From the IMG/VR virus record IMGVR_UViG_3300032562_000003, positions 1 through 64,000 of that record: a DNA stretch of 64,000 nt; one strand, given 5' to 3'. Below the pieces are notes generated by a model that was not told the origin of the DNA, did no database searches, and saw only the letters and a list, made by a program, of their open reading frames with translations. Positions 1,330-62,666 of this stretch are shown in pieces. Position 1 is the stretch's first letter. Each line of letters starts with the position of its first letter. The translations under genes were made by a program, and so were the position numbers.

Positions 1330-2721
1330 ATGCGTATTACAGAATTAGTTGAAGCCATTAACCAAACCAGTGTATTGACTGACACTGCGTATACTTTGTT
1401 GCGTAAAGAGATTGATAAGTTCGTAAAAGAAAATCGCAACAGAATCTATCATGCTATAGGTGTAGAAAACATCATTGCTCGAATGGAATCAAATGATAAG
1501 AAAATTGCAGACATTCGTGAACAACAGCTACCGTGGCAAGAAGAAGAAAAACTAGTTGAACCTTTGCAAAATCAGACTATGGATTTGTGGGGCGACGTAG
1601 AGCGCGACTCCTACACTAGTGAACCTAACAAAGAAATTGTCGAAGATTTTAAACACACTTTGGAATTAGATTTACAGAATGTGGCTCGTGATTACATTGA
1701 GACTCAATTTGGTAAAATCATGACTAAAGATCCTTCTCAGAAGGACATCAATTGGGATACCCGAACCAAACAAAATCTATATTGGTTAGAACACATAATT
1801 GTTCAGTTGGATACTAAAGGGGCCAACGCTCGTACCGGAGAACCAAAGACAGGCGGAGGTTACTATCAAGCCTATCCTTCAAAAAACAAAATACAAAGCA
1901 GATATGGGCAAACCATCGATTGGTGGAATGATTTAGCTGTGCATGTTAATGTGTACACTAGCGAAAAGAAATTATGGGAAGTGCTGACCAATAGACTACA
2001 GCAACTAGAAACAGAAGATAGATATGGTGAAAGCAGTATCTCCAATCCAATCCCAAAGTTTTTAAAGGATATACTACATACTTATGTGCATGAAGTTGTT
2101 CACTTAGAACAGGATGCACGTTTAAGAATTAACAAACAACAGGCAGAACTTAGAGGGGAACCATACGGTGTCAATCGAACAGATCATACTATGTTGCCTA
2201 ACCCAGACCAGCCTCGCCCTAAGATAACGATTCTTGATCCGAATAGCACCAAAGGATCTGATGTTAAGAACGCAGATGCCAAATACAGAAAATATCGCGG
2301 TGGAAAACGCGGTAATCCGGTGCAAGATGTTGATAGATTTGAAAACAATCTAAATCGATGGTCAGCATATTTAGGATCAGTTAATGAGATTGAAGCGCAC
2401 GCCGCCCACGCCGCAAGTGAACTTTATATGGAAATGTTGTCAAATTTATCAACATGGAGAAGCTATAGCTATTCAGACATTGATCGACAGCGAGAGATAA
2501 ATCAGTTTGTAGACAATGAGATTGATAATATTCGATATGGGTATTTCCCTAAAAATTTTTATACGATGGCGTCTATAGAACAAACCGCCAAAGAAGCTAT
2601 GCAAAAACCAAACCCAACTAATCAAGAAAAGCGGTTTATTAAGGTATGGCAAACTTATGTTAAGAAGATCATCAAGCATCTGCAAAGCTACAAAAAACCA
2701 GTACCTAAAGAAGAATATTAA
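1330..2721 (+). CDS. Putative internal-head protein with zincin metalloprotease motif
   Basis: HEVVH (HExxH) plus downstream NEIEAHA; N-terminus MRITELVE; late promoter. Confidence 0.55.
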   Translation: MRITELVEAINQTSVLTDTAYTLLRKEIDKFVKENRNRIYHAIGVENIIARMESNDKKIADIREQQLPWQEEEKLVEPLQNQTMDLWGDVERDSYTSEPNKEIVEDFKHTLELDLQNVARDYIETQFGKIMTKDPSQKDINWDTRTKQNLYWLEHIIVQLDTKGANARTGEPKTGGGYYQAYPSKNKIQSRYGQTIDWWNDLAVHVNVYTSEKKLWEVLTNRLQQLETEDRYGESSISNPIPKFLKDILHTYVHEVVHLEQDARLRINKQQAELRGEPYGVNRTDHTMLPNPDQPRPKITILDPNSTKGSDVKNADAKYRKYRGGKRGNPVQDVDRFENNLNRWSAYLGSVNEIEAHAAHAASELYMEMLSNLSTWRSYSYSDIDRQREINQFVDNEIDNIRYGYFPKNFYTMASIEQTAKEAMQKPNPTNQEKRFIKVWQTYVKKIIKHLQSYKKPVPKEEY

Positions 2722-2783
2722 GATTTTTAGTTGACTTATTTTCCTAAAAAGCTTATATTTAATTATAGGAAATGGAGAGCGAA

Positions 2784-3041
2784 ATGCCTGAGACGTATCA
2801 AGAACGAGTTGGACGTTACCGTATTATCCGTCACGAAGAACTTCCTGCTGCGCATAAGGCGGAGTACCGGCTCCGCGGTATCGACCCTGATAATAACTGG
2901 TCTTTGATTTGGTCTTTTGATGAGCCGGCGTCCGCTGAAAAGTGTCTCGAAGACTGCAACTTGACCAAGGCTTCGTTTCAAACCTACAAGCTGGTTGATG
3001 CTGGCCAGACAGAGTATATCGAACGTACTATGTGGTTTTAA
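2784..3041 (+). CDS. Small early hypothetical protein
   Basis: ORF behind promoter/RBS module 1. Confidence 0.75.
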   Translation: MPETYQERVGRYRIIRHEELPAAHKAEYRLRGIDPDNNWSLIWSFDEPASAEKCLEDCNLTKASFQTYKLVDAGQTEYIERTMWF

Positions 3042-3101
3042 AAACCAGTTGACTTCTTTTCAGTAAAAGACTATATTTAATTATAGGAAATGGAGATCAA
3101 G

Positions 3102-3269
3102 ATGGCGCGTAAAACCTATAAGACCTATTTTGTAAGTAAGGAAAACAACTGGGGCACTCCTCGCTGGGTCGTTTGGAAGGAAAATTGTTCGCCCTTCGGC
3201 CGATATCCTACTAAAACGGCTGCTATCAAGGACTGTCGTACATATGGCATTAAGCTTGAAGAACGCTAA
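3102..3269 (+). CDS. Small early hypothetical protein (55 aa, not in ORF track)
   Basis: MARKTYKTYFVSKENNWG...; GGAGA RBS, module 2. Confidence 0.7.
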   Translation: MARKTYKTYFVSKENNWGTPRWVVWKENCSPFGRYPTKTAAIKDCRTYGIKLEER

Positions 3270-3328
3270 ACCCCGTTGACTTATTTTCAGCAAAAGACTA
3301 TATTTAATTATAGGAAATGGAGATAGAG

Positions 3329-3541
3329 ATGTCTAAGGACACTGAACAGTATCGCGACCGTATGGAATTCCCTATGGAAGCCCTTGCCATAGAGCTTTTT
3401 GGATTTGCCGATCTCTCATGCGGAACCATGTCTGACCCTGAAATTGTAGAGCATGCGACCCGTAAGAGTAAGATGCTGAAGGAAATGATTCTGGCTACGG
3501 GCTTCTCTGAGGAAATGCTCAAGGCTTGCATGATAAACTAG
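3329..3541 (+). CDS. Small early hypothetical protein
   Basis: ORF behind module 3. Confidence 0.7.
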   Translation: MSKDTEQYRDRMEFPMEALAIELFGFADLSCGTMSDPEIVEHATRKSKMLKEMILATGFSEEMLKACMIN

Positions 3542-3598
3542 TTGACTTATGGTTCCTATATCTCTACGTTATAGATATAGAAATTGGGACCGATCCAT

Positions 3599-3901
3599 AT
3601 GCTACCGCCTATATCTGACGAACAAATGATGTGGTATATTCTTAAGGGGTATACTATTGATTTGGGCGCATACGGCGATCGGCATTGGTATCTTAACGGG
3701 CAACGTCACCGAGAAGACGGCCCTGCTATTGAATATGCGAACGGCGATCGGCATTGGTATCTTAACGGACAACGTCATCGAGAAGATGGTCCTGCGTGTG
3801 AATATGCGAACGGAGCTCGGTATTGGTATCTAAACGACCAAAACATGACCGAAGAAGAACACCGAAAACTCACACAAAAGAAAATGGCTAATATCGGTTG
3901 A
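3599..3901 (+). CDS. 22-aa repeat (MORN-variant-like, WYLNGQRHREDGPA) protein, paralogue 1 (2 units)
   Basis: 66-bp tandem repeats; termini near-identical to 14173 and 35731 copies. Confidence 0.85.
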   Translation: MLPPISDEQMMWYILKGYTIDLGAYGDRHWYLNGQRHREDGPAIEYANGDRHWYLNGQRHREDGPACEYANGARYWYLNDQNMTEEEHRKLTQKKMANIG

Positions 3902-4237: not shown

Positions 4238-4324
4238 GGACGTATTAGTATAGTGGTCGAATACACCTGGCTCTTAATCCGGACGCTTAGCGCATCGTAG
4301 GTTCGAATCCTACTACGTCCTCCA
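4238..4324 (+). tRNA. Atypical tRNA, anticodon CTT (Lys) with long variable arm
   Basis: Acceptor GGACGTA/TACGTCC, T-arm GTAGG-TTCGAAT-CCTAC, loop CTCTTAA, variable hairpin CGC-TTA-GCG, encoded CCA. Confidence 0.75.
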
Positions 4325-4333
4325 TTAAATTAT

Positions 4334-4409
4334 AGCAGTGTAGCATAGTAGCCAATGCAACAGATTCATATTCTGTCTATCGTGGGTGCGAGTCCCATCA
4401 CTGCTTCCA
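4334..4409 (+). tRNA. tRNA-CAT (elongator Met or Ile2)
   Basis: AGCAGTG/CACTGCT acceptor, ACAGA-TTCATAT-TCTGT anticodon arm, T-loop TGCGAGT, CCA. Confidence 0.85.
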
Positions 4410-5999: not shown

Positions 6000-6000
6000 C

Positions 6001-7023: not shown

Positions 7024-7103
7024 CGCGGGGTAGAGAAGTCCGGTCGTTCTCGCCAGTCTCATAAACTGGAAATCGGTGGTTCAAATCCAGCCTCCCGCAT
7101 CCA
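7024..7103 (+). tRNA. Initiator-like tRNA-fMet(CAT)
   Basis: CGCGGGG 5' end with C1:A72 mismatch; anticodon arm CCAGT-CTCATAA-ACTGG; CCA. Confidence 0.8.
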
Positions 7104-7220
7104 TTCAGTTTCTTGTTTCTGTAAAAAACAATTGGTGGAGCCCGGTACTGCTGTATCGGTCCTATTAGGATAGAGGGTTGTAAGTGACCTGTACTTGACT
7201 GGGAACTTTCGAAGATTTAT

Positions 7221-7295
7221 GCGGGTGTGGTATAGGAGATGTGCCCTAGCCTTCCAAGCTAGAGAGGACCGGAGCGTTGCCGGCCACCCGCTCCA
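7221..7295 (+). tRNA. tRNA-Gly(TCC)
   Basis: GCGGGTG/CACCCGC, CTAGC-CTTCCAA-GCTAG, U73, CCA; non-canonical T-loop AGCGTTG. Confidence 0.88.
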
Positions 7296-7299
7296 ATAT

Positions 7300-7374
7300 G
7301 CTTCCATAGTATAATGGTCATTACAATGCGTTGCCAACGCGTGGAAATCGGTTCGATCCCGATTGGAAGCTCCA
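7300..7374 (+). tRNA. tRNA-Gly(GCC)
   Basis: GCTTCCA/TGGAAGC, ATGCG-TTGCCAA-CGCGT, TTCGATC T-loop, CCA. Confidence 0.92.
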
Positions 7375-7391
7375 CTTTTCATAAATACTAG

Positions 7392-8882: not shown

Positions 8883-9497
8883 ATGTCTAATCGTTTCGTA
8901 GTTTCTGATACCCATTTTGGTCATACCAATTCATGGGAAAAGTTTAAGAAGGCTGATGGTTCGCCTCTGCGTCCTTTTAACTCAACTGAGGAAATGGACG
9001 AAGCGATGGTTGAACGCTGGAACAATATTGTTAGCCCTAGTGATACGGTGTATCACCTAGGTGATGTGGTCATCAACAAGAAGTCTCTGCATCACATCAA
9101 GCGTCTGAACGGTCACAAGCGTCTGATTCGTGGTAACCACGACATCTTTGACGACAAGCTGTACTATGAGGTTGGCTTCGATAAAATTGTGGCTTACCGA
9201 GTCTTTGTGGATGAATTTGTGTTTTCGCATATTCCTCTGCATCCGGATTGCATCAGTGATCGGTTCAAGTGTAACGTACATGGACATACCCATAGCAATA
9301 TCGTCACGCGAACGATTGTTACTGAACAAGGAGTCGAACAAAAAGAGGTTGATCCTAGGTATCTGTGTGTATCAGTGGAACACACTAACTTTGCCCCTAT
9401 TAGTTTTGAAGAGGTGAAGGCTAGAATACAAGCTCAAAACGAAGCTTGTGGTTATATGCCACCCAATAACAGTTGGGGTAATGGATCACCTACTTAG
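8883..9497 (+). CDS. Calcineurin-like metallophosphoesterase
   Basis: SDTHFGH, HLGD, GNHD, HGHTH. Confidence 0.9.
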   Translation: MSNRFVVSDTHFGHTNSWEKFKKADGSPLRPFNSTEEMDEAMVERWNNIVSPSDTVYHLGDVVINKKSLHHIKRLNGHKRLIRGNHDIFDDKLYYEVGFDKIVAYRVFVDEFVFSHIPLHPDCISDRFKCNVHGHTHSNIVTRTIVTEQGVEQKEVDPRYLCVSVEHTNFAPISFEEVKARIQAQNEACGYMPPNNSWGNGSPT

Positions 9498-10221
9498 TAG
9501 TATTGTGCATCAACCGACCCTTCTTGAACCCAATTGGTAACGGTGATCCGACTTTTATTTTTAAGTTTGTTTCACCGTTATTTATCCACATTGTTTTGTT
9601 CGGTCCTAATTTTTTTCCTTTATTCCAACTCGTATATCCCCTTTTACTCCAATGATTTTTAATTCCATTTTGTTTGTGGGTTTCAGGCTGTTGTTTTCCG
9701 AACCATCTGCTACCATCCCGTCCTAGCACAAACCCAGGTGGAATAGTAGATGTGGGATCAACCATCATTTCAGTGTGGTCGTTGTGTATCCAAATTTTGC
9801 CTCGCTGCATATTTGCTCCAATAACACTACCGAAATTGTTAAACGGAAGTCTACCTAATTTAAATGAATCGTCTGGTGGCGTTTCTCGAAATATTGTAAT
9901 ATTTCCGTCATTCCAGTGCCTGGTAGTTACAGTTGATCCGTCACCGGCTTCTGGTTTTAAATTCGCCCAGGTCTTCTTTCCGAATTCGTCTTTATCTTCG
10001 ACTATGTTCCATAATGTACTATAATACATTCCCCATTCTTTTATTTCTTCAAGTGTTTGACATTCACGTAAAATTTCAGTAGTAATATCTTTTCCATGTA
10101 TTTTAATATGATCCTTCCAATACGTTCCGGAACCTTGATATTTATATGGATTTTGTGTAGTTTTTCCTAAATAGTGTAGACCTGTTTTGTTATGAGTTTT
10201 CTTATACAAATAAATAGTCAT
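9490..10221 (-). mobile_element. Free-standing GIY-YIG (Seg-like) homing endonuclease with WxNNG repeats
   Basis: IYLYKKTHNKTGLHYLGKT..Y.GSG..W; HWNDG/WIHND/WINNG repeats. Confidence 0.85.
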
Positions 10222-14172: not shown

Positions 14173-14406
14173 ATGCTACCTCCGATATCTGACGAACAAA
14201 TGATGTGGTATATTCTTAAGGGGTATACCATTCATGTGGACGTATTCGGAACTCGGGATTGGTTTTTAAACGGGCAACGTCACCGAGAAGATGGTCCTGC
14301 GATTGAATATGCGGATGGAAGTCGGGCTTGGTATCTAAACGACCAAAACATGACCGAAGAAGAACACCGAAAACTCACACAAAAGAAAATGGCTAATATC
14401 GGTTGA
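14173..14406 (+). CDS. 22-aa repeat protein, paralogue 2 (1 unit)
   Basis: Last ~75 nt identical to paralogue 1. Confidence 0.85.
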   Translation: MLPPISDEQMMWYILKGYTIHVDVFGTRDWFLNGQRHREDGPAIEYADGSRAWYLNDQNMTEEEHRKLTQKKMANIG

Positions 14407-23750: not shown

Positions 23751-24458
23751 TCAGTAAAATTCATTCTTTACGTGCGGAGTAAATCCTAAATCTATGACGA
23801 CTGGGCTACCTTTGTAGATTCCCCAGTTACTAGCACGGGAAAAATCACCCAAAAGAATGTTACTGCTGCTAGCCAAGGTCGCAAGTTCGTCTACATAGTG
23901 CATAGTAGTCTCTATGTCTTCTTCAGTGGCGCCCCTTTTAGTCATCCAACTTTTTGCCTCTATTGGATTTAATGACCTATACCGGTCCTGTCCTGATTTA
24001 TTTTCCGCAACTGCTATTAAGTTACGAAGGCCTAAAGTAGAGCACCTCATTAACTTGCATAGTTTTGCTTCAGACGCTTTTTCTGCCAACTCAGTTTGAA
24101 TCCAGACCGGCTTATGATTCTGCTTGTCATAGTCGATAAGAGGAATAACAATGTCTAGTTGTCCAATGTATCCATCTTCTAGAATATCTACCTCAGCTTC
24201 ATTCTGTGCCATGCCTTTAGCGTTCTTTGCAATCTTTAGAACAGTAGGTCTACCTTGATATTCAATAGTCATCGCTACACGAGCAGAACCAGTGCCTAAT
24301 CGTTTGGCACGCTCTAGTGCATACGCCAATCTACTTTTGAAGGATTTAGCTTTTGGTTTTTCTGGAGTAGGTCTGGTACTAAATTCGTTTGGGTCCCAAT
24401 CAGAAGGAAGCGGTACCTCCATAAGATTTTTTTCAAAGATGAACTCATTTGCTCTCAT
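23751..24458 (-). CDS. Protein-kinase-like fold protein, putative internal head protein
   Basis: LGTGSARVA, VLKIAK, QNEAE, D....NWG, VVIDLG; N-terminus MRANEFIFE. Confidence 0.65.
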   Translation of the reverse strand: MRANEFIFEKNLMEVPLPSDWDPNEFSTRPTPEKPKAKSFKSRLAYALERAKRLGTGSARVAMTIEYQGRPTVLKIAKNAKGMAQNEAEVDILEDGYIGQLDIVIPLIDYDKQNHKPVWIQTELAEKASEAKLCKLMRCSTLGLRNLIAVAENKSGQDRYRSLNPIEAKSWMTKRGATEEDIETTMHYVDELATLASSSNILLGDFSRASNWGIYKGSPVVIDLGFTPHVKNEFY

Positions 24459-25009
24459 AGTGACTTACCCCACCTGGTGTTAATCACATTCCAGTTGATG
24501 ATCTTCCAAAGTTCGGTAAGATACTTTTTCTTATCTGAGCCATAGTCAAGCACAAATGAATGTTCCCACCAATCTACTAACAGTAGAATGTCATCGCGCA
24601 CTTCATGGTTCTTGATTGTTTTGATTTTGCCGTCGTAGGCTAGGTAGATCCAACCGGATCCATGAATCTTCATGGCTTCTTCTAAAAAGTCAGCCTGAAA
24701 CTTGCGATAATCACCGAAATGCTTATTGATAAAAGTAAGCATAGGCCCGTTCGGTTTGTTACCGACTCGCACTGCTCTGAATTGAGTAAACCATAAGTTA
24801 TGTAGGAAAACGCCCGCATAATTAAAATCGGGGTCACCTTCTTTGTCATTGAATCTTGTTGCGTAGCCTTTTGCCAACTTCTCATAATGCAGATTAAGGG
24901 TCTCTCCGCTCATGACGGGAGACACTTCTTTGACATCGAAGTTTAGTGCAATAATTTCTACGTCTTGAGGTTTTGATTTGTCCTCGAGGATGGTAATATA
25001 CTCACGCAT
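24455..25009 (-). CDS. sod: Fe/Mn superoxide dismutase (compact)
   Basis: LHY, FLHN, GSGW, DWWEH metal ligands. Confidence 0.85.
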   Translation of the reverse strand: MREYITILEDKSKPQDVEIIALNFDVKEVSPVMSGETLNLHYEKLAKGYATRFNDKEGDPDFNYAGVFLHNLWFTQFRAVRVGNKPNGPMLTFINKHFGDYRKFQADFLEEAMKIHGSGWIYLAYDGKIKTIKNHEVRDDILLLVDWWEHSFVLDYGSDKKKYLTELWKIINWNVINTRWGKSL

Positions 25010-25023
25010 GAGTATATTTATCG

Positions 25024-25239
25024 TTACTTGCGCCGAACTATTCTTCCTCGTGTAAGATCATACGGAGTTAGCTCCACGTCGACCTTATCACCCATAAGTA
25101 TGCGAATTTGATGCTGTCGCATCTTACCTGCTAGATGACTAAACACAATTACACCGTTATCAAGCTTTACTTTAAACGTTGCATTTGGTAGTACGTCTAT
25201 AATTTCTCCTTCCACCTTAATTGAATCCTGATTTGCCAT
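25024..25239 (-). CDS. infA: Translation initiation factor IF-1
   Basis: EG...[12 protein letters not shown]....H.AGKMR...[22 protein letters not shown]. Confidence 0.95.
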
Positions 25240-25974: not shown

Positions 25975-26142
25975 TTATTCCGAACATGAGCAACTGTCAC
26001 AGTTACCGCATCGCTTAGAGTCACATGAAGAACAGTACCAGCCCTTTTCAGTGTGAACTACAGTATTTTGTCCGCATTTACCGCATCGTTTTCCGACAGG
26101 TTTTTTGGGTTGTTCTATCTTAAATACAGGTTCAGTGGTCAC
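25975..26142 (-). CDS. Small Cys-rich zinc-ribbon protein (55 aa, not in ORF track)
   Basis: GTG start overlapping upstream TGA; CGKCG...WYCSSC...CGNCDSCSC. Confidence 0.55.
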   Translation of the reverse strand: MTTEPVFKIEQPKKPVGKRCGKCGQNTVVHTEKGWYCSSCDSKRCGNCDSCSCSE

Positions 26143-26693
26143 TTACTAGTTTCCTTAAAAGCAGAGCAAAGACCACTCACAACCTTATCCAACCTATCTT
26201 CGTCAGCCTGATACTTGATTCCGATTCCGCCGGCAGCAATCCACTTTCGAATATTTACGCCATAGTCATCGATGAGTATGTTTGGAGTACCGTCCTTCTG
26301 AACAGCGTATTTGGCCTTATCATGATCAAATATAACATGTTTTGGTTTCACCGTTATATTCTTATTCAACCATTCGCGCTTTCCCTTGATACTACCGTCC
26401 CGATCAAAGTTCAGTGGGCTACTAAGAATGTCGTAGTCACCGGCAAACTTCTTTACTATTTCCAGCAGTTCGTTTGAAGTGGGGAAAACACCGATGCTTT
26501 TAAACAGATGAAATGCGTTGGAATCTCTGAAAAATGTTTCCCATTGATCAGGAGTCATTTCATTGTAATGTTCTACGTCGTGAAGATCACCTGCGTAACC
26601 GAATAGATCAGCTAGTACGCCATCCATATCCACAAATACGGTTGGTTTACCCTTGTCTAATTGCTTACTTTCTATTAGTTCTATGATCTTCAT
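26139..26693 (-). CDS. HAD-family 5'(3')-deoxyribonucleotidase
   Basis: FVDMDGVLAD, ILSSP, GKREW, LIDD. Confidence 0.85.
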   Translation of the reverse strand: MKIIELIESKQLDKGKPTVFVDMDGVLADLFGYAGDLHDVEHYNEMTPDQWETFFRDSNAFHLFKSIGVFPTSNELLEIVKKFAGDYDILSSPLNFDRDGSIKGKREWLNKNITVKPKHVIFDHDKAKYAVQKDGTPNILIDDYGVNIRKWIAAGGIGIKYQADEDRLDKVVSGLCSAFKETSK

Positions 26694-26791
26694 AGATTAT
26701 ATTTATTCAAACTTACTAAATATTACGTATTATTACATGAAGAATCTTTGATGTCAAGGATCTTCATAGCCAAAAACAATAAGGAAAACAA

Positions 26792-36448: not shown

Positions 36449-37039
36449 CTAGTCGCGCTTAGTGACGATCTTATCGATAAGCCCGTATTCCAAAGCTTCT
36501 TGGGCAGACATAAACTTATCGCGGTCCATGTCACGCTCAAAATCTGCATACGTCTTTCCGGCAGAGTTATGTTCGACGTAGATTTCAGTCAAACGCTTCT
36601 TGAGATAGGTGATCTCCTTGTAAGAAATCTCGATATCACTTTGCATTCCGCGGGCGCCACCAGATGGTTGGTGAATCATGTGACGAGCGTTCGGAAGCAT
36701 AAATCGCTTTCCAGCTGCACCTGCCTGAGCAAGCAATGATCCCATCGAGCAGGCCTGTCCCATCACGATAGTGGAAACATCAGGCTTGATGAACTGAATA
36801 GCATCGTAGATCGCCATGCCAGCAGTAACGGAGCCACCTGGCGAGTTTATATAGAGCGAAATGTCAGCAGAAGAATCTTCGGATTCTAGGTAGAGCAATT
36901 GCGCTACGATAAGGTTAGCCATTTGATCATGAACTTCACCCTCCAAAAGAATCACTCTGTCTCTGAGAAGGCGCGAATAAATGTCATAACTTCTTTCGCC
37001 ACGGCTGGTTTGTTCAAGTACGATTGGAACGAGACTCAT
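36449..37039 (-). CDS. clpP: ATP-dependent Clp protease proteolytic subunit
   Basis: [31 protein letters not shown]. Confidence 0.97.
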
Positions 37040-47030: not shown

Positions 47031-47474
47031 TTATCTAAGCCAGGATTCAATTAGGGTGTTCAAGTCATCGTCGCAAGGGTCAGCGTCTTCTTTTGCAAGG
47101 CGCTTCGCCATATTTTGTTGAATTTTTATGTTGGGTGGTTGGCCCGTACCCAATTGAGCATGGGTGAATACTCCGTATAATTTAATTGTTGTAGGCTTTC
47201 TACCGGATAGTTCATACACTATAGACATGTCCGAAGACAAGTGGGCCTTTCTAGCTTTTGGCATATACTGGGCGTATGCCCCTTCGGATTTAAAGCGATT
47301 ATCACTTGGACCAAACGGTGTTATTGGATCCCGACTCTTAACTTCTTGAAACTCCTCAATCTTCTTGAGAATATTAGGAGTGTCCTTGATGGCAGAAATC
47401 AATGACTCGTCCCAAAGAGGTCCGTAATCAAACACCACTGTGTTTACAGGTTGACCTTTAAAAGGAGATGCCAT
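47031..47474 (-). CDS. RelE/YafQ-like mRNA interferase toxin
   Basis: R.AHL..D..IVY.....I.LYGVFTH..L pattern of YafQ-type toxins. Confidence 0.6.
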   Translation of the reverse strand: MASPFKGQPVNTVVFDYGPLWDESLISAIKDTPNILKKIEEFQEVKSRDPITPFGPSDNRFKSEGAYAQYMPKARKAHLSSDMSIVYELSGRKPTTIKLYGVFTHAQLGTGQPPNIKIQQNMAKRLAKEDADPCDDDLNTLIESWLR

Positions 47475-47658
47475 TAGCTTCCGCTACCGCTCGCAACCGA
47501 GCCTTAGATTCCTCAAGGGTGTAAGGCCCAGACCACGGACCGTTCTTGCTCTTGATGATCTTGACAACATCTTCGGTACGAAGACCGGTGTCATTGTTAG
47601 CATCGATAGCTTCAAAGAGCGCTTGCTCGCTCGGTTGCATGACTTCGTTGATATTCAT
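47458..47658 (-). CDS. Small protein overlapping the toxin gene, putative antitoxin
   Basis: TATAAATA promoter, AAGGA RBS, MNINEV start; 17-nt overlap. Confidence 0.5.
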   Translation of the reverse strand: MNINEVMQPSEQALFEAIDANNDTGLRTEDVVKIIKSKNGPWSGPYTLEESKARLRAVAEANGISF

Positions 47659-49282
47659 GTGACGTTCCTTAGATGTATTTATAAATCTACGAATTATAAT
47701 AGTAGAATGGGCAATAGGTGTCAACCTATATTTTGAAATCTTTTGATTTAATTCTCAGCCTGTTCAAGTTGAATGATCTTTTGTCCGAGACGGAGGAGTT
47801 CAAACTGCGCCGCCATAAGAGCGTAGTGATGCTTTTCATCAGAAGATTTGATAAGAGCGTCAAGTTCCTTAACGCGATTATCAATCATGATTTTAACGGC
47901 AAGCGGTGTCATGTCTCGTCTTTCTCAATGCTTCACAATAGCTAATGGTCTATATTTTTGGGACCTTGGATTTTTATCTCAAATTTTCTCTTTGGACCAA
48001 AAATCATGATTTTTGTGCAGCACTTAAAGTCGCTATAAAGCCGGGCGCTGGATATTTAAAATGTTTAGCCATTATTCTTACTCTGTAATTTTAGATTCGT
48101 CGAAATTTTGCATAGCAATAGTTAGCGATTCCTCAATCAATTGATTGAGTGTTATGTCTCGCTCGTGTGCCATAAGCATAAGATCATAAATTTCTTCATG
48201 CTCTAGCTCGATTTCCAAATCTACTCGGTTGTCTTCCTTCTTCGCTCTCGGTGCAAATTCCTGAACGTATAAGCTCCATTTTTCCATAGCATCAGCGTAG
48301 CTAGCCTTCACCCGTGCTAATTCCGAAGCTAACTTTTCGTTTTGCATAGCCAACTGTGCCGCGCGCCGATCAGCTTCCTCAGCCCGATTCATGTAGATAA
48401 TAGTATGAGTGTCCATTGTTTTTCAATCCTTAAACGTGAATACCCAATTTGGTACCGGAAGATTAACATACGAGTTTTTAAACCAGGCCGGCCACGTTAA
48501 CGCAATATATGCTTCTCCGTACAAATTGATTGCAGGGATATTACTCTTAAAGAGTAATCCTACATACGAACCAACAAGCAAATATGTACTAATTACGGCG
48601 ATACATAGAAGGCTGATAATCTGTTTCCGATTACCTGGCATGCGTTATCCGCTCATCAGAAAAACAAATCCGGCAACTGCGGCCGCAATACCAAGCACAG
48701 ATCCGGCCACGACAAGCTTGGCGCCCTTAGAGAAAGTAGGACCCTTCCTAGAACCAGACCAAGCAACTTCGCCGGCTTGAAGACCAAGGCCCTTAGCAGA
48801 ACCATGACGAAGCATGGATTGATACGTTTCACCCGGCATACGCGGAAGTTCAGAAGGCATTGTCGTTCTCCATAAGTTAGATCGTATTAGTACTATACAC
48901 TAAGAATGCAGCAAGTCAACCGTTTAATCATAACTCGCGTTTGATTCGATTTCAGCATATGAAGACGGCATCCAAGCTTCTTCATACACACCGTGATTAT
49001 ATCGATACTTCAATACTTTGTATGATTGAAACAGACCAAAGAAAACCGGCTTTGCACTCCAGGAAATAGGTTGCTTAACTTTCCAAAAATGATCATGTAA
49101 TACTAGCTGACCATCTTTATTGACATACATTCCCATCGGAGTTCCTCTTCATCCAGTCAAAGAAATGCCATCCCAGCACTGCTGGCGTCCATTCCTTATC
49201 AGGATTGGCGTCTTGCCATTCACGAATTTGCCGAAGATTTAGTTCGGTAATTACGGTAATGTTGTTCTTTACCCATTCGTAG

Positions 49283-54722: not shown

Positions 54723-56606
54723 ATGAATTATCTAATCGACTTTGCTACCACGTTATCTGATGCTGATATCAACGCATATTTAGCCGCTAATAACATGACC
54801 TCAGTAAAGGCATACACGACTTTCAAGAATGTACATCTTGTTTCCTCAGAGGTAGAACCTAAGGTCGATTCCTCAGTACTAAAAGTAAATTCTGATGATG
54901 GCAATGATATCAAACTTCTAGATTTTGATATCACAGTGACTCAACCAAAGAGCGAAGAATTAGATATACAGGTACATGACGATAAGGATTGGTGGAAGGT
55001 AGTTTCTCTTAATGACGTTGATCTTTCCAAGCCAACTTACACACAGGAACGTCGTGGTTTTGGTAGCGTCGTATATATTATGGACAGCGGAATCGAAGCT
55101 ACTCATCCTGATTTTACGAACGCTAAAGTTACTTTGTTACATAGTTTTACTACTGACTTTACTGATACAAAGGGACACGGCACTGCTTTGGCTAGTTTAG
55201 TTGCAGGTGATACTTGTGGGCTGACTAGAGCTGAAATTAAGGTAGTTAAGGTATTCGATATTAACACTGCCACTAAACAAAGTGATCTATTATCAGCACT
55301 AGATGCGATTGCAGTAGATTATAATAGCAATGGTCTTCCTCCATCAGTTCTTAACTTAAGTTGGTCTATTGCCAGAAACATATATGTAGACTCTAAAATT
55401 CAAGAGCTAATCGATTTAGGTATTTTTGTGGTAGCTGCTGCTGGTAATAGTGGAACTACAATCGGTGACGTTACCCCTGCTGCTATTCCTGATGTATTGA
55501 CTATTGGTTCATTTGGTCACTCACTAACCCCTAGTGATTTTTCTGATTACACAGGCAGCGCTATTTCGGTAACGGGTTCTACTACAAACTCTGGCGCGCT
55601 AGACGGCTGGGCACCTGGAGAGAAGATTTGGGCTGCTGGATTAAAAGGTACATATGCATTTATTGCAGGTACTTCAGCTTCTTCTGCAATTGCTTCAGGA
55701 GCTATTGCTCATAATTTAAGTGTATATGTAGATAGTAACGGAAATACACCTAGTGTTTACACAAATCATAGTGCCAGAAAAGATTACTTTGCAGGGGTAT
55801 TGTCAACTTCAAATATTACTATGGACGATAATACGATGTACAGAATGATGTGTTTAGGTAAGAAAGATGTGCTGAATCTTTCTGACCCTAAATATGCTCT
55901 TTCTGAGAATTTAATCGCATCATACCTACAATCAGTTGCTATAGTGTCTCCTACAATCAGAATAATTTCAGAATCAGGTAAGCCGTACTATTCAGATGTA
56001 CTAGTCAATGCACCTATCACTAGAATCACTGGACCAGATTTACCTAGTTACGTCACAATCGATGAAACCGGACTAATGACTATTACCTCTCCGACAATAA
56101 CCGATCCATATGAACAACTTCCTTCTTTGAGCTTAACAACGTACTCAGCCTCTGGTGCAACTCAAAATATTAGTGTTATGTTGTTTGTATTCAGAGATGG
56201 GGTAACGTTAGGCAATATCTCTACACTAGTTCCTACGACAGATCCTGTAGTAAATGCAGTATTACTAGCCAATACCTGTTTGACTAACGGATATTGCGGC
56301 GTTGACGACTGTTATCTTGAAGGACCTTTTGCGTGTCTGGGCAGCGGGAAATTTGGTTGCTATTGTCAATATGGTAGTGACGAGAGAGTTAAGGACAATA
56401 TCCTCTTAGAGGACACTATAGATGGACTGAATATCTATTCATACAACTATATTTGGGATAAGCATCGTAGGCTTTCTGGTGTAATGGCACAAGAGCTGAT
56501 CGGTACAGTTCACGAAAAGGCTGTGGTCAATACAGAATCCGGTTACTTCAAGGTCGATTATAATCGGTTACCTTCTAACGTAAAGTTCAGAATTTTCGGT
56601 AAGTAA
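54723..56606 (+). CDS. Subtilisin (S8) protease fused to a Cys-rich segment and a C-terminal S74 intramolecular chaperone
   Basis: MDSG, HGT, AAGN, GTS; 6-Cys segment 56277-56375; SDERVKDNI...GVMAQEL...KVDY; late promoter. Confidence 0.85.
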   Translation: MNYLIDFATTLSDADINAYLAANNMTSVKAYTTFKNVHLVSSEVEPKVDSSVLKVNSDDGNDIKLLDFDITVTQPKSEELDIQVHDDKDWWKVVSLNDVDLSKPTYTQERRGFGSVVYIMDSGIEATHPDFTNAKVTLLHSFTTDFTDTKGHGTALASLVAGDTCGLTRAEIKVVKVFDINTATKQSDLLSALDAIAVDYNSNGLPPSVLNLSWSIARNIYVDSKIQELIDLGIFVVAAAGNSGTTIGDVTPAAIPDVLTIGSFGHSLTPSDFSDYTGSAISVTGSTTNSGALDGWAPGEKIWAAGLKGTYAFIAGTSASSAIASGAIAHNLSVYVDSNGNTPSVYTNHSARKDYFAGVLSTSNITMDDNTMYRMMCLGKKDVLNLSDPKYALSENLIASYLQSVAIVSPTIRIISESGKPYYSDVLVNAPITRITGPDLPSYVTIDETGLMTITSPTITDPYEQLPSLSLTTYSASGATQNISVMLFVFRDGVTLGNISTLVPTTDPVVNAVLLANTCLTNGYCGVDDCYLEGPFACLGSGKFGCYCQYGSDERVKDNILLEDTIDGLNIYSYNYIWDKHRRLSGVMAQELIGTVHEKAVVNTESGYFKVDYNRLPSNVKFRIFGK

Positions 56607-60360: not shown

Positions 60361-60813
60361 TTAGCTGACCTCAGTAAATCCGTTACCCAAATCTCGCTGA
60401 GCTATGATACGAACATCGTCACGCTTAGCCGGGTCTGCTTGTTCTTGCTCATACACTTCTAGTGCAATATTGCGACAAACTGTTTGAAACCAGCGGTCAA
60501 CAATCTCTGCATCAGTGTCATTTTGTCTAAATTTGTAACCTTGTTTGACAAGATTTAACACAAACTTGTCATTCCAGTCTAATTCAAACGATCCATTGTT
60601 AATGTCTTTGGGATCAAGTTCGACTTTAGTAATTGCGATATATGGTTGACCAGCAGCAGTAGCCAGTTCCTTAGCAGTCAATGCGGGTACCGCTGGTTTA
60701 GGAGCCCTAGGCTTTCTAGGCTTTCTAACCTTAGGAACTTCGACTAGTTCTGGGATAGGTGCAGGCTGCTCAACAGGTGTGCCATTCCACCACTTTTTTA
60801 ATGCATCAAACAT
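60361..60813 (-). CDS. Phage hypothetical protein
   Basis: G.FELDWND.F...L...GY......IVD.WF. Confidence 0.7.
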   Translation of the reverse strand: MFDALKKWWNGTPVEQPAPIPELVEVPKVRKPRKPRAPKPAVPALTAKELATAAGQPYIAITKVELDPKDINNGSFELDWNDKFVLNLVKQGYKFRQNDTDAEIVDRWFQTVCRNIALEVYEQEQADPAKRDDVRIIAQRDLGNGFTEVS

Positions 60814-60822
60814 AATTTTTCC

Positions 60823-61410
60823 TTATATAGTAGTATATATCGTCTTGTCCTTAACCCGTTGAGAAACAACAGCACCGTCAATCCAAACAGGAGGCTCTCG
60901 ATTAGACCAGCGATGCAAGTCTTTCTTACCTTTGTTGTAATAATTTCGATAGTTGACGATAGGATCATCACTGATAATAAATTCGACAGCCATGCAAGAC
61001 GGCATTTTAGTCATTGCGTTTCGGCGCAAGTTCGTTGGGGTAGTCTCAAGAATCCGAGCTACGCTTTTCATAGTAGAATGCTGCTTGCCATAACGATGAG
61101 TATACTCATCACCTAATGCGATCAAATGTGCATGTAGCCACTTGTAATTATCCAATGATTCCCGGGCCCAAACAGCAGACGGGTGATTTGCGTGGGTACT
61201 TTTGTACAGATGATCCTCGCGGCTATCTGATAGAACATATCGCTTAATGTTACGGCCTCGGGCCGTCTTTTGAGCTTCCTGAACCCCGTCGAGCATACGA
61301 TGGGCAGTTGATAGCAATTGTGCTGTCTCGATGATCATTTTGACCACGTGCCGATCGACCATAGACTGCGCAGCAAGCTTGGGATCAGAGTTTACATAGA
61401 AAATGTTAAT
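60823..61410 (-). CDS. DenV-like pyrimidine-dimer DNA glycosylase family protein, apparent ATT start
   Basis: (M)NIFY...P..AA....D.HVVKMI.E.AQLLSTAH, H.NHPS..W, Y..RYGK.H; GGAG RBS before ATT. Confidence 0.75.
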   Translation of the reverse strand: MNIFYVNSDPKLAAQSMVDRHVVKMIIETAQLLSTAHRMLDGVQEAQKTARGRNIKRYVLSDSREDHLYKSTHANHPSAVWARESLDNYKWLHAHLIALGDEYTHRYGKQHSTMKSVARILETTPTNLRRNAMTKMPSCMAVEFIISDDPIVNYRNYYNKGKKDLHRWSNREPPVWIDGAVVSQRVKDKTIYTTI

Positions 61411-61463
61411 CGTACTTCTCCAGATGAATGATAAATAGTTTATACTTAACAATGGGATTATAT

Positions 61464-62666
61464 ATGGACATTCGTAGAATTATAGACATAATAAATGAAA
61501 ACACCGGAGAAGTCAAGGGAACACCTCCGTTTTCGGATAACTTGAATGTCATGACGTTGGGACAGTTTCTAAACATGTCAGGAATCCTCACTCCAGATGA
61601 GAAAGAGGAAGAGGTTGACGAAGCAAAACTAGATGCGACCGCGAGACCTTTTGGCAAAGAGGAAATGACAAAGTACCTCGATACAATCACAAGCAAAACT
61701 AAAGGCAAAGCAGATAAGTATAAAAAGCCATATATTCATGGTAGTAACATTCCTATTGTTGGTGAAGGCGGCGAAAAATACGATCTAAAGAAACTACGTT
61801 CAGATATCACTAAGAGGCCAGCCAAAGTACTCAAGCAGAACGAAAAGATGCAACACAGTGATGGTACTGCAAGCGTCTTCTACAATGTAGGTCTGCCTGC
61901 GCTTAAAGGCTTAGCGGTCGATGAAGACAACGGAGAATTCGTAATCATCGACACTTGTCCGGGTGCGGGTGCATGTCAAACATATTGTTACGCTATGAAG
62001 GGCGGCTACATACAATGGAAGAATGTATCGATGGACCAGTCACAGCTTTTAAACTTCCTCTATAATGATCCATCAGGATTTATGGACATGATGGGTAGTG
62101 AAATTGAAGCAGCAGACAAAAAGTTTAACAAGAAAGACAAGAAGACCAAACTAGTAATTCGTTGGCACGACGCAGGTGACTTCTTCTCTCCACAATATCT
62201 TGCAATGGCATATTCACTAGCTAAAAAGTATCCTAAAGTAGACTTCTATGCTTACACAAAATTAGCATCGGTTGCTAAATCAGAAAAGCCTGATAACTTC
62301 AAGATTAACTATTCAATGGGTGCAAAACCTTCTCAAGAAAAAGAAATCGATTTTGCTGTTACTAAAAACAGTAGAGTTGTTCCTCGTGAATTATTCACTG
62401 ATCTTATTGCTAAAGACGGAGCAAAACTACTGAAGGACGCCAAAGGTCGTATGCAGTTCAAAACAAAACAGGATCTCAAGGCATTCAAAGAACGCCTTGC
62501 TGCAAAATACAGTGTAGATCCAAAGTCAATACTAACATACGATGAAATGATGTCAACCCCAGTTAGTTCCGAAAAAAACAAGTACAACGTGATCGTCATG
62601 CCGGGAGACGGTGACGACTCTGCAAACAGAAGTGACGTTCTAAACAGCTTCCTGCTAATGCACTAA
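61464..62666 (+). CDS. Gp88-like Cys-cluster protein, putative internal head protein
   Basis: TCPGAGACQTYCYA, RWHDAGDF, FYAYTK; N-terminus MDIRRIIDIINE; late promoter. Confidence 0.65.
   Translation: MDIRRIIDIINENTGEVKGTPPFSDNLNVMTLGQFLNMSGILTPDEKEEEVDEAKLDATARPFGKEEMTKYLDTITSKTKGKADKYKKPYIHGSNIPIVGEGGEKYDLKKLRSDITKRPAKVLKQNEKMQHSDGTASVFYNVGLPALKGLAVDEDNGEFVIIDTCPGAGACQTYCYAMKGGYIQWKNVSMDQSQLLNFLYNDPSGFMDMMGSEIEAADKKFNKKDKKTKLVIRWHDAGDFFSPQYLAMAYSLAKKYPKVDFYAYTKLASVAKSEKPDNFKINYSMGAKPSQEKEIDFAVTKNSRVVPRELFTDLIAKDGAKLLKDAKGRMQFKTKQDLKAFKERLAAKYSVDPKSILTYDEMMSTPVSSEKNKYNVIVMPGDGDDSANRSDVLNSFLLMH

What the first reader, a model, noticed from the sequence alone, without database searches (positions are those of the whole stretch)
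1330..62666. T4-like capsid-targeting N-termini on an enzyme cargo (SOD, kinase, nucleotidase, metalloprotease, Gp88-like, TA partner)
Seen: late-expressed genes start MRITELVE (1330), MRANEFIFE (24458), MREYITILE (25009, SOD), MKIIELIE (26693), MNINEV (47658) and MDIRRIIDIINE (61464). Known: T4 internal proteins carry a ~10-aa capsid-targeting sequence (MKTYQEFIAE type) removed after Glu by the prohead protease. Inference: this phage may package and inject a superoxide dismutase, a kinase-like protein, a deoxyribonucleotidase and a zincin at infection.
Basis: partly seen in the sequence, partly recalled or inferred. Interest (0 to 1): 0.65.

Follow-up and report, generated by a model that had tools for sequence, protein, structure and literature searches.

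The report
Capsid-address tags on phage enzymes
A giant lake-water phage related to T4 puts the same short N-terminal peptide, almost identical to T4's known capsid-targeting sequence, on some twenty unrelated late proteins, including a superoxide dismutase, a nucleotidase and kinase-like enzymes, so it very probably loads these enzymes into its head, perhaps to deliver them with its DNA.

Summary
The window is the first 64 kb of a 258,859-bp uncultivated lake-water jumbo phage. It has T4-type capsid protein, scaffold, S77 (gp21-like) prohead protease and gp55-like late sigma factor.

All six cited N-termini exist. Three fit a strict tag, M-[RK]-x-x-E-[FL]-x(1-3)-E. That tag occurs at 15 gene starts, all within three genes of an ATAAATA late promoter (15/99 against 0/228, p=7.5e-9). 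Its core (MRVTEFIAE) nearly equals the T4 IPII/IPIII capsid-targeting sequence MKTYQEFIAE.

The SOD tag (MR[DE]φIxLLE) is kept in 80 relatives, and structurally it is a 15-residue add-on to a complete Fe/Mn SOD fold. The GP88-like protein shares a second tag (..IDIINE) with a neighbouring gene's product; a protein in the head gene cluster carries a looser version (..LVINE). MNINEV is weak.

The same cargo bodies carry different, lineage-specific tags in other S77-protease phages. The slot beside the SOD gene is hypervariable, yet its ORFs are always tagged. In cultured relative PA5oct, 7 of 9 tagged proteins and the SOD homologue were found in virions by mass spectrometry.

Cleavage, packaging and injection remain untested in this phage. 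"Metalloprotease" and "TA partner" are not supported; "kinase-like" is a lead only.

The parts
1317..1324 (+). T4-type late promoter box TATAAATA, 5 nt before the ATG of gene 1330 (leaderless-type spacing). It overlaps a divergent box that serves 430-1290(-).
   Evidence: Sequence read. ATAAATA lies within 60 nt upstream of 50 genes against 3.4 expected.
1330..1353 (+). Tag MRITELVE; predicted cleavage after E8, before A9.
   Evidence: M1, L6, E8 and A9 are invariant in 15 homologues of 36-54% identity. Residues 1-10 have pLDDT below 50 and form a short helix at 3-9.
1330..2721 (+). 463-aa tagged protein with invariant HEVVH (H254, E255, H258). Fold unassigned.
   Evidence: No Pfam, PHROG or PDB sequence match. 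Homologues. No fold match.
23751..24458 (-). 235-aa tagged protein-kinase-like protein. Tag MRANEFIFE is encoded at 24432-24458. It is the second gene of the SOD operon.
   Evidence: phrog_4301. Nearest named clusters in the ESM Atlas are Pkinase / T7 kinase. Homologues in XacN1 and Alishewanella phages carry other tags before the same PLPDDWD body.
24455..25009 (-). 184-aa Fe/Mn superoxide dismutase with a 15-residue N-terminal add-on: tag MREYITILE (encoded at 24983-25009) plus linker DKSKPQ.
   Evidence: Pfam Sod_Fe_C 7e-23 and Sod_Fe_N. Model residues 16-182 align to E. coli FeSOD 1-192, Z 17.7. Metal ligands H41, H70, D146 and H150 are invariant. The tag is kept in 80 relatives. The PA5oct homologue was detected by virion MS.
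25015..25021 (-). Late promoter core ATAAATA, 5 nt before the SOD start codon.
   Evidence: The same arrangement occurs in relatives.
26139..26693 (-). 184-aa NT5C-type 5'(3')-deoxyribonucleotidase. Tag MKIIELIE (encoded at 26670-26693) and a linker precede the DMDGV motif.
   Evidence: Pfam NT5C 1.2e-8 from residue 17, phrog_2643. Relatives occur in tagged, half-tagged and untagged forms.
26700..26706 (-). Late promoter core ATAAATA, 6 nt before the nucleotidase start codon.
47458..47658 (-). 66-aa late protein starting MNINEV. Weak candidate: a possible 17-residue propeptide ending ALFE|A.
   Evidence: Late box at 47676-47682 with an RBS. MK[IL]NEV..ALFE|A is conserved in 8 relatives. No family match.
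61431..61437 (+). Late promoter core ATAAATA. It overlaps the upstream in-frame ATG at 61428, so it favours 61464 as the true start.
   Evidence: Relatives start at MDIR...
61464..62666 (+). 400-aa GP88-family protein with the second-class tag MDIRRIIDIINE (encoded at 61464-61499).
   Evidence: Pfam GP88 1.4e-30. The tag class is shared with C1:125336-125848 (Sigma70_r4); C1:130530-131360, a head-cluster protein, carries a looser ..LVINE form. 80 relatives carry MDIRNILNIITE, MNFRKLIKLVTE, MKIHEIITE or MKTFKQHLNE.

Best explanation
**What it is.** The short N-terminal peptides are capsid-targeting propeptides of the T4 kind. The phage is a T4-superfamily jumbo phage.

**Proposed mechanism.**
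1. Late in infection, gp55-type late transcription from ATAAATA promoters makes about 15-20 proteins. Each starts with an 8-12-residue amphipathic helix that ends in hydrophobic-x-Glu. The main form is M-R-[AV]-x-E-F-[IL]-x-E or M-K-I-x-E-L-x-E. A second form is ..I-[DN]-I-I-N-E.
2. The tag docks the protein onto the gp22-like scaffolding core while the prohead assembles.
3. The S77 (gp21-like) prohead protease then cuts after the Glu. It also cuts the capsid protein's propeptide and shreds the scaffold.
4. The mature proteins stay inside the DNA-filled head. By analogy with T4 IPI-III and Alt, they leave with the DNA at infection.

**Cargo.** In the window: a Fe/Mn SOD, an NT5C nucleotidase, a kinase-like protein, an HExxH protein and a GP88-family protein. 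Elsewhere in the genome: a methyltransferase, a Sigma70-region-4 protein, a T7-kinase-like protein, a 756-aa GH19 hydrolase and several unknowns.

**Shown versus inferred.**
- Shown: the tag, its statistics, its modularity, the head machinery, and late-promoter linkage at sequence level.
- Shown in a relative: virion association of tagged proteins in PA5oct.
- Inferred: docking on the scaffold, cleavage, retention in the head, ejection, and what the enzymes do on arrival.
For: **Head machinery.** Gp23 capsid protein (1.4e-98). Peptidase_S77 (3.7e-26). Between them lies a 363-aa protein with about 38 phi-x-E sites. The capsid protein has four such sites in its first 44 residues and only one more, near its C-terminus. 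A gp55-like late sigma factor is present (6e-75).

**Identity with T4's tag.** Read from the T4 record: IPII/IPIII MKTYQEFIAE|A, Alt MELITELFDE|D, gp22 MLKEQLIAE|A. Here: MRVTEFIAE|G, MRANEFIFE|K and MRITELVE|A.

**Statistics.**

**Unrelated bodies.** SOD, NT5C, GP88, GH19, methyltransferase and Sigma70_r4. Only four small paralogue groups exist among 21 candidate proteins.

**The tag is an add-on.** SOD residues 16-182 equal FeSOD 1-192; residues 1-15 are a low-confidence detached helix. NT5C homologues exist with and without a tag.

**Lineage-specific tags on the same body.** The kinase-like body follows MRANEFIFE here, MKQVRLSQFLSE in XacN1 and MKIYNLYSTLLE in Alishewanella phage Slicko01. 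Three of its neighbours in Slicko01 start M[KM][IM]xxLYES[IL]LE and a fourth starts MKFNFLYESMLNE. All these phages encode S77. GP88 relatives show the same pattern.

**Hypervariable tagged slot.** Beside the SOD gene in 80 relatives there are 65 tagged ORFs in 11 body families. This mirrors the T-even ip loci, whose proteins share only the leader (PMC3012670, PMC12373910).

**Virion data in PA5oct.** Seven of 9 tagged annotated genes are ESI-MS/MS positive, against 86 of 436 others (p=3.6e-4). All four of this phage's tagged proteins that have a PA5oct homologue are positive there, including the SOD (PMC7318152).

**Position.** Tagged genes 124158, 124739 and 125336 lie downstream of the capsid gene, separated from it by two other ORFs (one of them the weak candidate 125900). 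130530 lies just upstream of the protease gene.
Against: - There is no proteomic, transcript or cleavage evidence for this uncultivated phage. Only DNA metagenome runs hold it.
- The PA5oct virion preparation also contained untagged cytoplasmic enzymes such as RNR, thymidylate synthase and ligase; the authors list '7 virion-unrelated enzymes'. Detection of the SOD homologue could therefore be contamination.
- Gene starts come from my own crude caller.
- Some NT5C relatives keep only MRAxEL without the second Glu, so cleavage may not be universal.
- The Vibrio phage 2.275.O SOD has no tag.
- The partner that T4's CTS binds is itself not defined structurally (PMC9958956).
- Whether a metal-dependent dimeric SOD survives passage through the tail is unknown.
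- MNINEV cannot be told from chance by sequence.
Confidence: 0.74

Rival explanations
1. The tags are real prohead-protease propeptides, but the proteins are resident internal head components that act inside the capsid or in assembly. For example, the SOD could protect packaged DNA from oxidative damage in lake water, and acidic proteins could serve as core material. On this view they are not effectors delivered to the host.
For: The second-class tag relates to a looser form (..LVINE) on the very acidic head-cluster protein 130530-131360, whose PA5oct homologue is a virion 'structural protein'. 77500 and 92087 are homologous to PA5oct structural gp205. Nothing here tests ejection.
Against: T4 proteins with the same tag (IPI-III, Alt) are injected and act in the host (PMC12373910, PMC9958956). 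Kinase-like enzymes, a nucleotidase, a methyltransferase and a sigma-region-4 protein have substrates in a cell and not in a capsid. The hypervariable tagged slot looks like arms-race cargo.
Confidence: 0.14
2. The N-terminal peptide is a recognition signal for the phage's own ClpXP (or ClpS/ClpAP) machinery and times the degradation of late proteins.
For: The window encodes ClpP (36449-37039) and ClpX (40129-41325). PA5oct has ClpX, ClpS, ClpP and ClpA. Known ClpX N-motifs begin Met-basic-hydrophobic (own knowledge, not tested here).
Against: Near-identical tags work as capsid-targeting sequences in T4, which as far as I know encodes no ClpXP (own knowledge, not checked). Tagged proteins are enriched in PA5oct virions. 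Tagged genes cluster with head genes. The invariant feature is the phi-x-E protease site followed by a variable residue.
Confidence: 0.04
3. The motif is a translation feature, a preferred codon or peptide start for leaderless or weakly SD-led late mRNAs, with no targeting role.
For: Four tagged genes (1330, 25009, 26693, 79100) have ATAAATA 5-6 nt before the ATG. Most others lack a clear Shine-Dalgarno sequence.
Against: Codons in the tag vary synonymously while the residues are fixed. Seven other leaderless-type genes have no tag. Tail and baseplate late genes lack it. The Glu and the hydrophobic residue at P3 are the invariant positions.
Confidence: 0.03
4. Chance resemblance, or shared ancestry of a paralogous family.
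For: A bare phi-x-E near an N-terminus is common: 31% of genes. Four small paralogue groups exist among the candidates.
Against: 17 observed against 2.7 expected. 14 of 16 six-frame matches fall at gene starts. 11 DNA matches against 1 in the control. The bodies have unrelated Pfam folds.
Confidence: 0.02

Closest known systems
T4 capsid-targeting sequence of internal proteins IPI/IPII/IPIII and Alt, removed by prohead protease gp21 (Mullaney and Black 1996; reviews PMC3012670, PMC9958956, PMC5694885)
   Same: An extreme N-terminal 8-19-residue peptide ends in hydrophobic-x-Glu. The core EFIAE is identical (MKTYQEFIAE against MRVTEFIAE). It is shared by otherwise unrelated late proteins. The genome has gp21, gp22-like, gp23 and gp55 homologues. 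There is a hypervariable locus whose ORFs share only the leader. One T4 cargo, Alt, is also an enzyme.
   Different: The tag is one residue shorter and Arg-rich. There are at least 15 carriers instead of about 4-5. Most carriers are recognisable enzymes or larger multidomain proteins (up to 756 aa) rather than small basic anti-restriction proteins. A second tag class (..IDIINE) coexists. No experimental test exists.
Ejection and inner-body proteins of phiKZ, 201phi2-1 and SPN3US, processed by their S77-type proteases (PMC5694885, PMC10052503)
   Same: These are jumbo phages with a homologous protease that cuts after Glu. Many packaged proteins, including enzymes such as the virion RNA polymerase, carry N-terminal propeptides thought to act as targeting signals.
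   Different: Their cleavage motif is S/A/G-x-E, with a small residue at P3. Most propeptides are longer than 100 residues. There is no shared short consensus tag.
Pseudomonas jumbo phage PA5oct virion proteome (PMC7318152)
   Same: It is the nearest cultured phage found here that carries the tagged SOD (38% identity, N-terminus MNDSIKKYISIAE|A). Its virion MS list contains the SOD homologue and 7 of 9 proteins with M[KR]-phi-x-[EDN]-phi..E starts.
   Different: The authors did not note the tags, the SOD identity or any processing. The preparation also held untagged cytoplasmic enzymes. The tag consensus is looser than in this clade.
Virion-packaged superoxide dismutase of chlorovirus PBCV-1 (Kang et al. 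2014, as reviewed in PMC7019647)
   Same: A late-expressed viral SOD is carried in the particle and is proposed to lower superoxide at the start of infection.
   Different: It is a Cu/Zn SOD in a eukaryotic giant virus, with a different packaging route and no cleavable T4-type tag.

Membership tests
T4-type capsid-targeting sequence (CTS) cargo | Short peptide at the extreme N-terminus that ends in hydrophobic-x-Glu, the gp21 cleavage motif | tested here: met
   T4 reference peptides were read from NC_000866. L6, E8 and A9 are invariant in P0001 homologues. L8 and E9 are invariant in SOD relatives.
T4-type capsid-targeting sequence (CTS) cargo | The same leader sits on proteins with no other similarity | tested here: met
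   Pfam folds differ. All-against-all BLAST of the bodies gives only four small paralogue groups. There are 11 body families in the slot beside the SOD gene.
T4-type capsid-targeting sequence (CTS) cargo | Genome encodes the gp21-type prohead protease, a scaffolding core protein and the Gp23 capsid protein | tested here: met
   The scaffold is assigned by position and its phi-x-E density only; it has no Pfam match.
T4-type capsid-targeting sequence (CTS) cargo | Late expression together with the head proteins | tested here: inconclusive
   At sequence level, all 15 strict tags are in operons headed by ATAAATA and a gp55-like sigma factor is present. No RNA data exist.
T4-type capsid-targeting sequence (CTS) cargo | Protein is present in virions | tested here: inconclusive
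   Evidence comes only from the relative PA5oct: 7 of 9 tagged genes and the SOD homologue are ESI-MS/MS positive. That preparation also contained untagged enzymes.
T4-type capsid-targeting sequence (CTS) cargo | Leader is removed by the prohead protease after the Glu | not testable with these tools
   Needs semi-tryptic peptides or N-terminal sequencing.
T4-type capsid-targeting sequence (CTS) cargo | Leader is sufficient to encapsidate a foreign protein, and the cargo is ejected into the host | not testable with these tools
   Experimental only.
Fe/Mn superoxide dismutase (24455-25009) | Two-domain SOD fold with the His, His, Asp, His metal ligands | tested here: met
   Pfam matches are above cut-off. 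The alignment to 1ues keeps all four ligands. H41, H70, D146 and H150 are invariant in 22 sequences. Z 17.7 over 166 residues to 1isa. The N-domain hairpin is shortened. Activity is untested.
NT5C 5'(3')-deoxyribonucleotidase (26139-26693) | HAD-type DxDxV/T nucleophile motif and an NT5C profile match | tested here: met
   Pfam NT5C scores 35.4 bits against a cut-off of 24.8, and phrog_2643 matches. DMDGV lies at residues 22-26.
Protein kinase-like fold (23751-24458) | Profile or fold match to Pkinase with the catalytic Lys, D-x4-N loop and DxG | tested here: inconclusive
   No Pfam or PDB sequence match. ESM Atlas: the nearest named clusters are T7 kinase and Pkinase at 0.94, and the structure TM is 0.47-0.52. 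The motifs VLKIAK, DFSRASN and IDLGF were seen by eye only.
Zincin metalloprotease (1330-2721) | HExxH on an active-site helix within a zincin fold | tested here: inconclusive
   HEVVH is invariant in 15 homologues. There is no Pfam, PHROG or PDB match. There is no fold match by Foldseek or VIA-align. The model is above 400 residues and the domain was not folded alone.
Pfam GP88 (61464-62666) | Profile match above the gathering score | tested here: met
   107.3 bits against a cut-off of 24.4. The family's function is unknown.
Toxin-antitoxin partner (47458-47658) | Match of either gene of the pair to a toxin or antitoxin family | tested here: not met
   No Pfam or PHROG match at E of 0.001 or better for 47458-47658 or the overlapping 47031-47474. 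PADLOC was not searched.

The most novel reading that the evidence does not exclude
Lake-water jumbo phages of this clade carry a swappable, address-labelled enzyme kit: SOD, nucleotidase, several kinases, a methyltransferase, a sigma-region-4 protein and a wall hydrolase. The kit is pre-loaded in the head and delivered with the DNA, so that host redox state, nucleotide or signalling pools, and transcription are altered before any phage gene is expressed. The lineage-specific tag co-evolves with the scaffold. It therefore works as a readable code that predicts the injected proteome of uncultivated phages from sequence alone.
Probability: 0.3. Interest if true: 0.8.

Novelty: new variant of a known kind. 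Interest (0 to 1): 0.62.

Why it matters
In T-even phages, injected internal proteins are the first line of counter-defence, and they were found precisely by their shared leader. The same logic appears to operate on a much larger scale and with enzymatic cargo in an abundant, uncultivated freshwater jumbo-phage clade, with parallels in PA5oct, XacN1 and the Alishewanella phages.

If so, the tag gives a cheap sequence rule for listing the proteins a phage brings into the cell. It would point to unexpected early-infection activities such as superoxide removal, dephosphorylation of deoxynucleotides, phosphorylation and methylation. It would identify a hypervariable cargo locus worth mining for anti-defence functions. 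It would also offer new encapsidation tags for phage engineering.

In addition, it re-interprets part of the published PA5oct virion proteome.

Tried and rejected
- **Nearest relatives.** Megablast of 12 kb of the window against cultured phages found nothing. Relatives were reached only through protein or distant DNA searches.
Enrichment among genes with their own TAAATA box is not significant (3/50 against 12/277). The operon-level test was used instead.
- **Bare phi-x-E.** It is useless as a criterion, being present in 31% of genes in both classes.
- **P0001 as a zincin.** Pfam, PHROG, PDB sequence search, the pattern-based locus search, Foldseek and VIA-align wide all gave nothing.
- **P0002.** The PDB sequence search gave only chance-level hits.
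- **'TA partner'.** No family match.
- **PA5oct supplementary tables.** They are not held, so peptide-level evidence for cleavage could not be read.
- **Complex prediction.** There is no result either way.
- **Expression data.** Only DNA lake-water metagenomes hold the sequence.
- **Literature.** Searches found no description of these tags or of a packaged phage SOD. This shows absence from the held library only.
- **DNA polymerase fragment 72953-74197 (MNLTKIILE).** Rejected as cargo. It does not fit the strict tag.

Full report
**What the window is**

The 64-kb window is the start of a 258,859-bp IMG/VR viral contig, 40.6% G+C, estimated 73% complete. No cultured phage is close at DNA level.

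The contig encodes:
- a Gp23-family major capsid protein at C1:127403-128599(-) (Pfam 1.4e-98);
- a Peptidase_S77 (T4 gp21-type) prohead protease at 129736-130374(-) (3.7e-26);
- a gp55-like late sigma factor at 145890-146786(-) (phrog_12791, 6e-75);
- a large terminase.

Its capsid gene is 68-71% identical at DNA level to those of Rak2/CBB-like jumbo phages, Sinorhizobium phage Phosso and Vibrio phage 2.275.O. The same DNA is present in lake-water and freshwater metagenomes of 17 studies. No RNA run holds it.

Gene coordinates come from my own simple caller, which uses codon bias, an RBS score and greedy overlap removal. It gave 327 genes covering 94% of the contig.

**The observation**

All six quoted N-termini are in the sequence as stated.

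Genome-wide, E-phi-phi-(x)-E within the first 14 residues occurs in 17 of 327 proteins, against 2.7 expected from internal windows. Among all 9,463 ATG triplets in six frames, 16 open with M[RKI]xxE[phi]x(1-3)E, and 14 of them are called gene starts. A DNA-level pattern gives 11 matches here against 1 for the reversed control.

The carriers form a tight consensus:
- MRANEFIFE (24458), MRANEFLIE (78513), MRVTEFIAE (88474), MRVTEFLSE (90501), MRAREFISE (92090), MRAIEFLIE (93376), MRAWEFIVE (216692), MRAHEFITE (217114);
- MKIIELIE (26693), MRITELVE (1330), MKIQELFE (125320), MKIQELLNE (124736), MIGNEIILE (79100).

Arg, Ala, Glu, Phe, Ile and Leu codons vary synonymously among them, so the constraint is on the peptide.

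A second class..IDIINE, links 61464 (GP88) to 125336-125848. The head-cluster protein 130530-131360 carries a looser ..LVINE version.

**Link to late transcription**

ATAAATA occurs 91 times. It lies in sense orientation within 60 nt upstream of 50 genes, against 3.4 expected.

All 15 strict tags sit within three genes and 30-nt gaps downstream of such a box: 15/99 against 0/228, p=7.5e-9. This is robust to the operon definition used. The test restricted to genes with their own box is not significant (3/50 against 12/277), because most tagged genes are internal to late operons.

A bare phi-x-E is equally common in both classes (31%). It carries no information.

**Comparison with T4, read from the T4 record itself**

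| T4 protein | N-terminus |
|---|---|
| IPII, IPIII | MKTYQEFIAE\|A |
| IPI | MKTFKEF...ITE\|A |
| Alt | MELITELFDE\|D |
| gp22 | MLKEQLIAE\|A |

The present MRVTEFIAE|G differs from the IPIII leader essentially by one missing residue. In T4 this leader directs proteins into the scaffolding core and is cut off by gp21. The internal proteins share nothing else, and they are injected with the DNA (PMC3012670, PMC9958956, PMC5694885, PMC12373910).

Here, the protein between the protease and capsid genes has about 38 phi-x-E sites in 363 residues. The capsid protein has four such sites in its first 44 residues (last: LAE44|SSAG) and only one more, near its C-terminus. This is the pattern expected if a gp21-like specificity operates.

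**The tag is a module**

*SOD (24455-25009).*
- It matches both Fe/Mn SOD Pfam domains from residue 18.
- It keeps all four metal ligands, H41, H70, D146 and H150, which are invariant in 22 relatives.
- In an AlphaFold model, residues 16-182 superpose on E. coli FeSOD residues 1-192 (Z 17.7, rmsd 3.0 A, 166 aligned). Residues 1-15 are a detached low-confidence helix plus linker.
- In 80 IMG/VR relatives (70-100% identity) the N-terminus is M-R-[DE]-phi-I-x-[LI]-L-E followed by a variable residue and KSKPQD.
- The Vibrio phage 2.275.O SOD lacks the extension. The PA5oct homologue has MNDSIKKYISIAE|A.

*Nucleotidase (26139-26693).* It matches NT5C from residue 17, and DMDGV lies at 22-26. Its relatives occur in three forms:
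- fully tagged (MKIQELLE.., MRAREFIIE..);
- half-tagged (MRASELKLPQG..);
- untagged (MKKPEVYLDMDGV).

*Kinase-like body of 23751-24458.* It is preceded by MKQVRLSQFLSE in Xanthomonas phage XacN1 and by MKIYNLYSTLLE in Alishewanella phage Slicko01. Three of its neighbours in Slicko01 begin M[KM][IM]xxLYES[IL]LE and a fourth begins MKFNFLYESMLNE. In longer relatives the same domain is C-terminal, yet the tag stays at the extreme N-terminus.

*GP88 relatives.* They carry MDIRNILNIITE, MNFRKLIKLVTE, MKIHEIITE or MKTFKQHLNE.

XacN1, Slicko01, PA5oct and the Vibrio phage all encode Peptidase_S77.

*The slot beside the SOD gene.* In the 80 relatives it holds 65 tagged ORFs falling into 11 body families, nearly all starting MRAxEFxxE. 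This is the counterpart of the hyperplastic ip loci of the T-even phages.

**Virion evidence from a cultured relative**

PA5oct's GenBank record marks the 93 gene products found by ESI-MS/MS of purified particles (PMC7318152).
- Of nine annotated genes with a tag-like start, seven are marked, against 86 of the other 436 (Fisher p=3.6e-4).
- Every tagged protein of the present phage that has a PA5oct homologue is marked there: the SOD, 77500, 92087 and 130530.

Caveat: the same preparation contained untagged ribonucleotide reductase, thymidylate synthase, ligase and others. The paper itself lists seven 'virion-unrelated enzymes'. A single detection therefore proves little. No peptide-level data were available.

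**The cargo labels**

| Gene | Label | Verdict | Basis |
|---|---|---|---|
| 24455-25009 | SOD | stands | |
| 26139-26693 | NT5C nucleotidase | stands | |
| 61464-62666 | GP88-like | stands | |
| 23751-24458 | kinase | lead only | no Pfam or PDB sequence match; ESM Atlas places it next to Pkinase / T7-kinase clusters; plausible VLKIAK, DFSRASN and IDLGF motifs seen by eye |
| 1330-2721 | metalloprotease | not shown | 15 homologues with invariant M1, L6, E8, A9 and HEVVH; no family or fold match |
| 47458-47658 | TA partner | no support | no family; its start, MK[IL]NEV...ALFE\|A in relatives, is only a weak candidate propeptide |

Outside the window, further tagged proteins include:
- a methyltransferase (124739-125320);
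- a Sigma70-region-4 protein (125336-125848);
- a T7-kinase-like protein (124158-124736, phrog_15752);
- a 756-aa GH19/endolysin-like protein (86204-88474);
- several proteins of unknown function.

**Rivals**

- *Phage ClpXP degron.* Conceivable, because ClpP and ClpX are encoded in the window. It does not explain the identity with T4's leader, the head-gene linkage or the virion enrichment.
- *Translational feature of leaderless mRNAs.* Contradicted by synonymous variation and by untagged leaderless-type genes.
- *Chance or paralogy.* Excluded for the strict tag.
- *Resident head components.* The serious open alternative is that the proteins stay in the head rather than being delivered. Nothing here tests ejection.

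**Novelty**

The mechanism is T4's. The following appear undescribed in the literature held here:
- the scale, at least 15 carriers;
- the enzymatic cargo;
- the second tag class;
- the lineage-specific tag exchange on shared bodies;
- the SOD.

A virion-packaged SOD is known for chlorovirus PBCV-1 (PMC7019647). I found none described for a phage.

**Limits**

- The gene calls are mine.
- The phage is uncultivated.
- There are no expression, cleavage, packaging or injection data for it.
No alternative genetic code was used.

Noticed in passing
window 1318-1324, 7381-7387 region, 8326(-), 25015-25021(-), 26700-26706(-), 29933(-); also C1:79100(-), 106666(-), 109475(-), 220717, 228635: Eleven genes have the late box ATAAATA ending only 1-6 nt (mode 5) before the ATG, with no Shine-Dalgarno sequence. 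If transcription starts where it does at T4 late promoters, these would be leaderless late mRNAs. The spacing is kept in SOD orthologues of relatives.
   Followed up: partly
window 1291-1329: Two overlapping, divergent TATAAATA boxes in one 39-nt spacer serve 430-1290(-) and 1330-2721(+).
   Followed up: no
L015-L094, about 2050-3500 (downstream of the SOD gene); window 23751-24458: The gene slot after the SOD is hypervariable among 80 relatives: 65 tagged ORFs in 11 body families, all with the MRAxEFxxE start. It is an analogue of the T-even ip locus and a place to mine for injected effectors.
   Followed up: partly
window 36449-37039(-), 40129-41325(-), 25024-25215(-): The phage encodes ClpP, ClpX and a translation initiation factor IF1-like protein. 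The relative PA5oct has ClpX, ClpS, ClpP, ClpA, FtsH and ribosomal protein S21.
   Followed up: no
window 54723-56606(+): A 627-aa protein with a subtilisin-like S8 protease domain. Its nearest phage matches are Bacillus phage 'intracellular serine protease' genes at 25-33% identity.
   Followed up: no
window 2739-2783, 3057-3101, 3284-3328: Three consecutive small genes (2784, 3102, 3329) are each preceded by a near-identical 45-nt cassette, TTTTC.G.AAAAG..TATATTTAATTATAGGAAATGGAGA. This is probably a repeated non-late promoter plus RBS.
   Followed up: no
window 3599-3901(+), 14173-14406(+), 35731-36309(-); contig end: A repeated gene family starts MLPP[IL]S[DG]EQ[MK]MWYILKGYTI (MORN-like repeat proteins by eye). 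A further copy runs off the contig's 3' end.
   Followed up: no
window 9490-10221(-), 30248-30910(+); C1:132578, 141975: Paralogous ORFs start MTIYLYKKTHNKTGL and resemble GIY-YIG homing endonucleases by eye. They share a conserved upstream motif and are scattered through the genome, including inside the head gene cluster.
   Followed up: no
window 4238-4409 and 7025-7374: Five tRNA genes: Lys-CTT, two Met-CAT, Gly-TCC and Gly-GCC.
   Followed up: no
C1:72953-74197(-) and 75112-76791(-): Family B DNA polymerase seems split into two ORFs, with an opposite-strand gene (74252-75151) between them. PA5oct has the same split around a homing endonuclease.
   Followed up: no
C1:125336-125848(-): A tagged 170-aa protein with a Sigma-70 region 4 domain lies downstream of the capsid gene, two ORFs away. 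If packaged, it could act on host RNA polymerase on arrival, as T4 Alt does by another route.
   Followed up: partly
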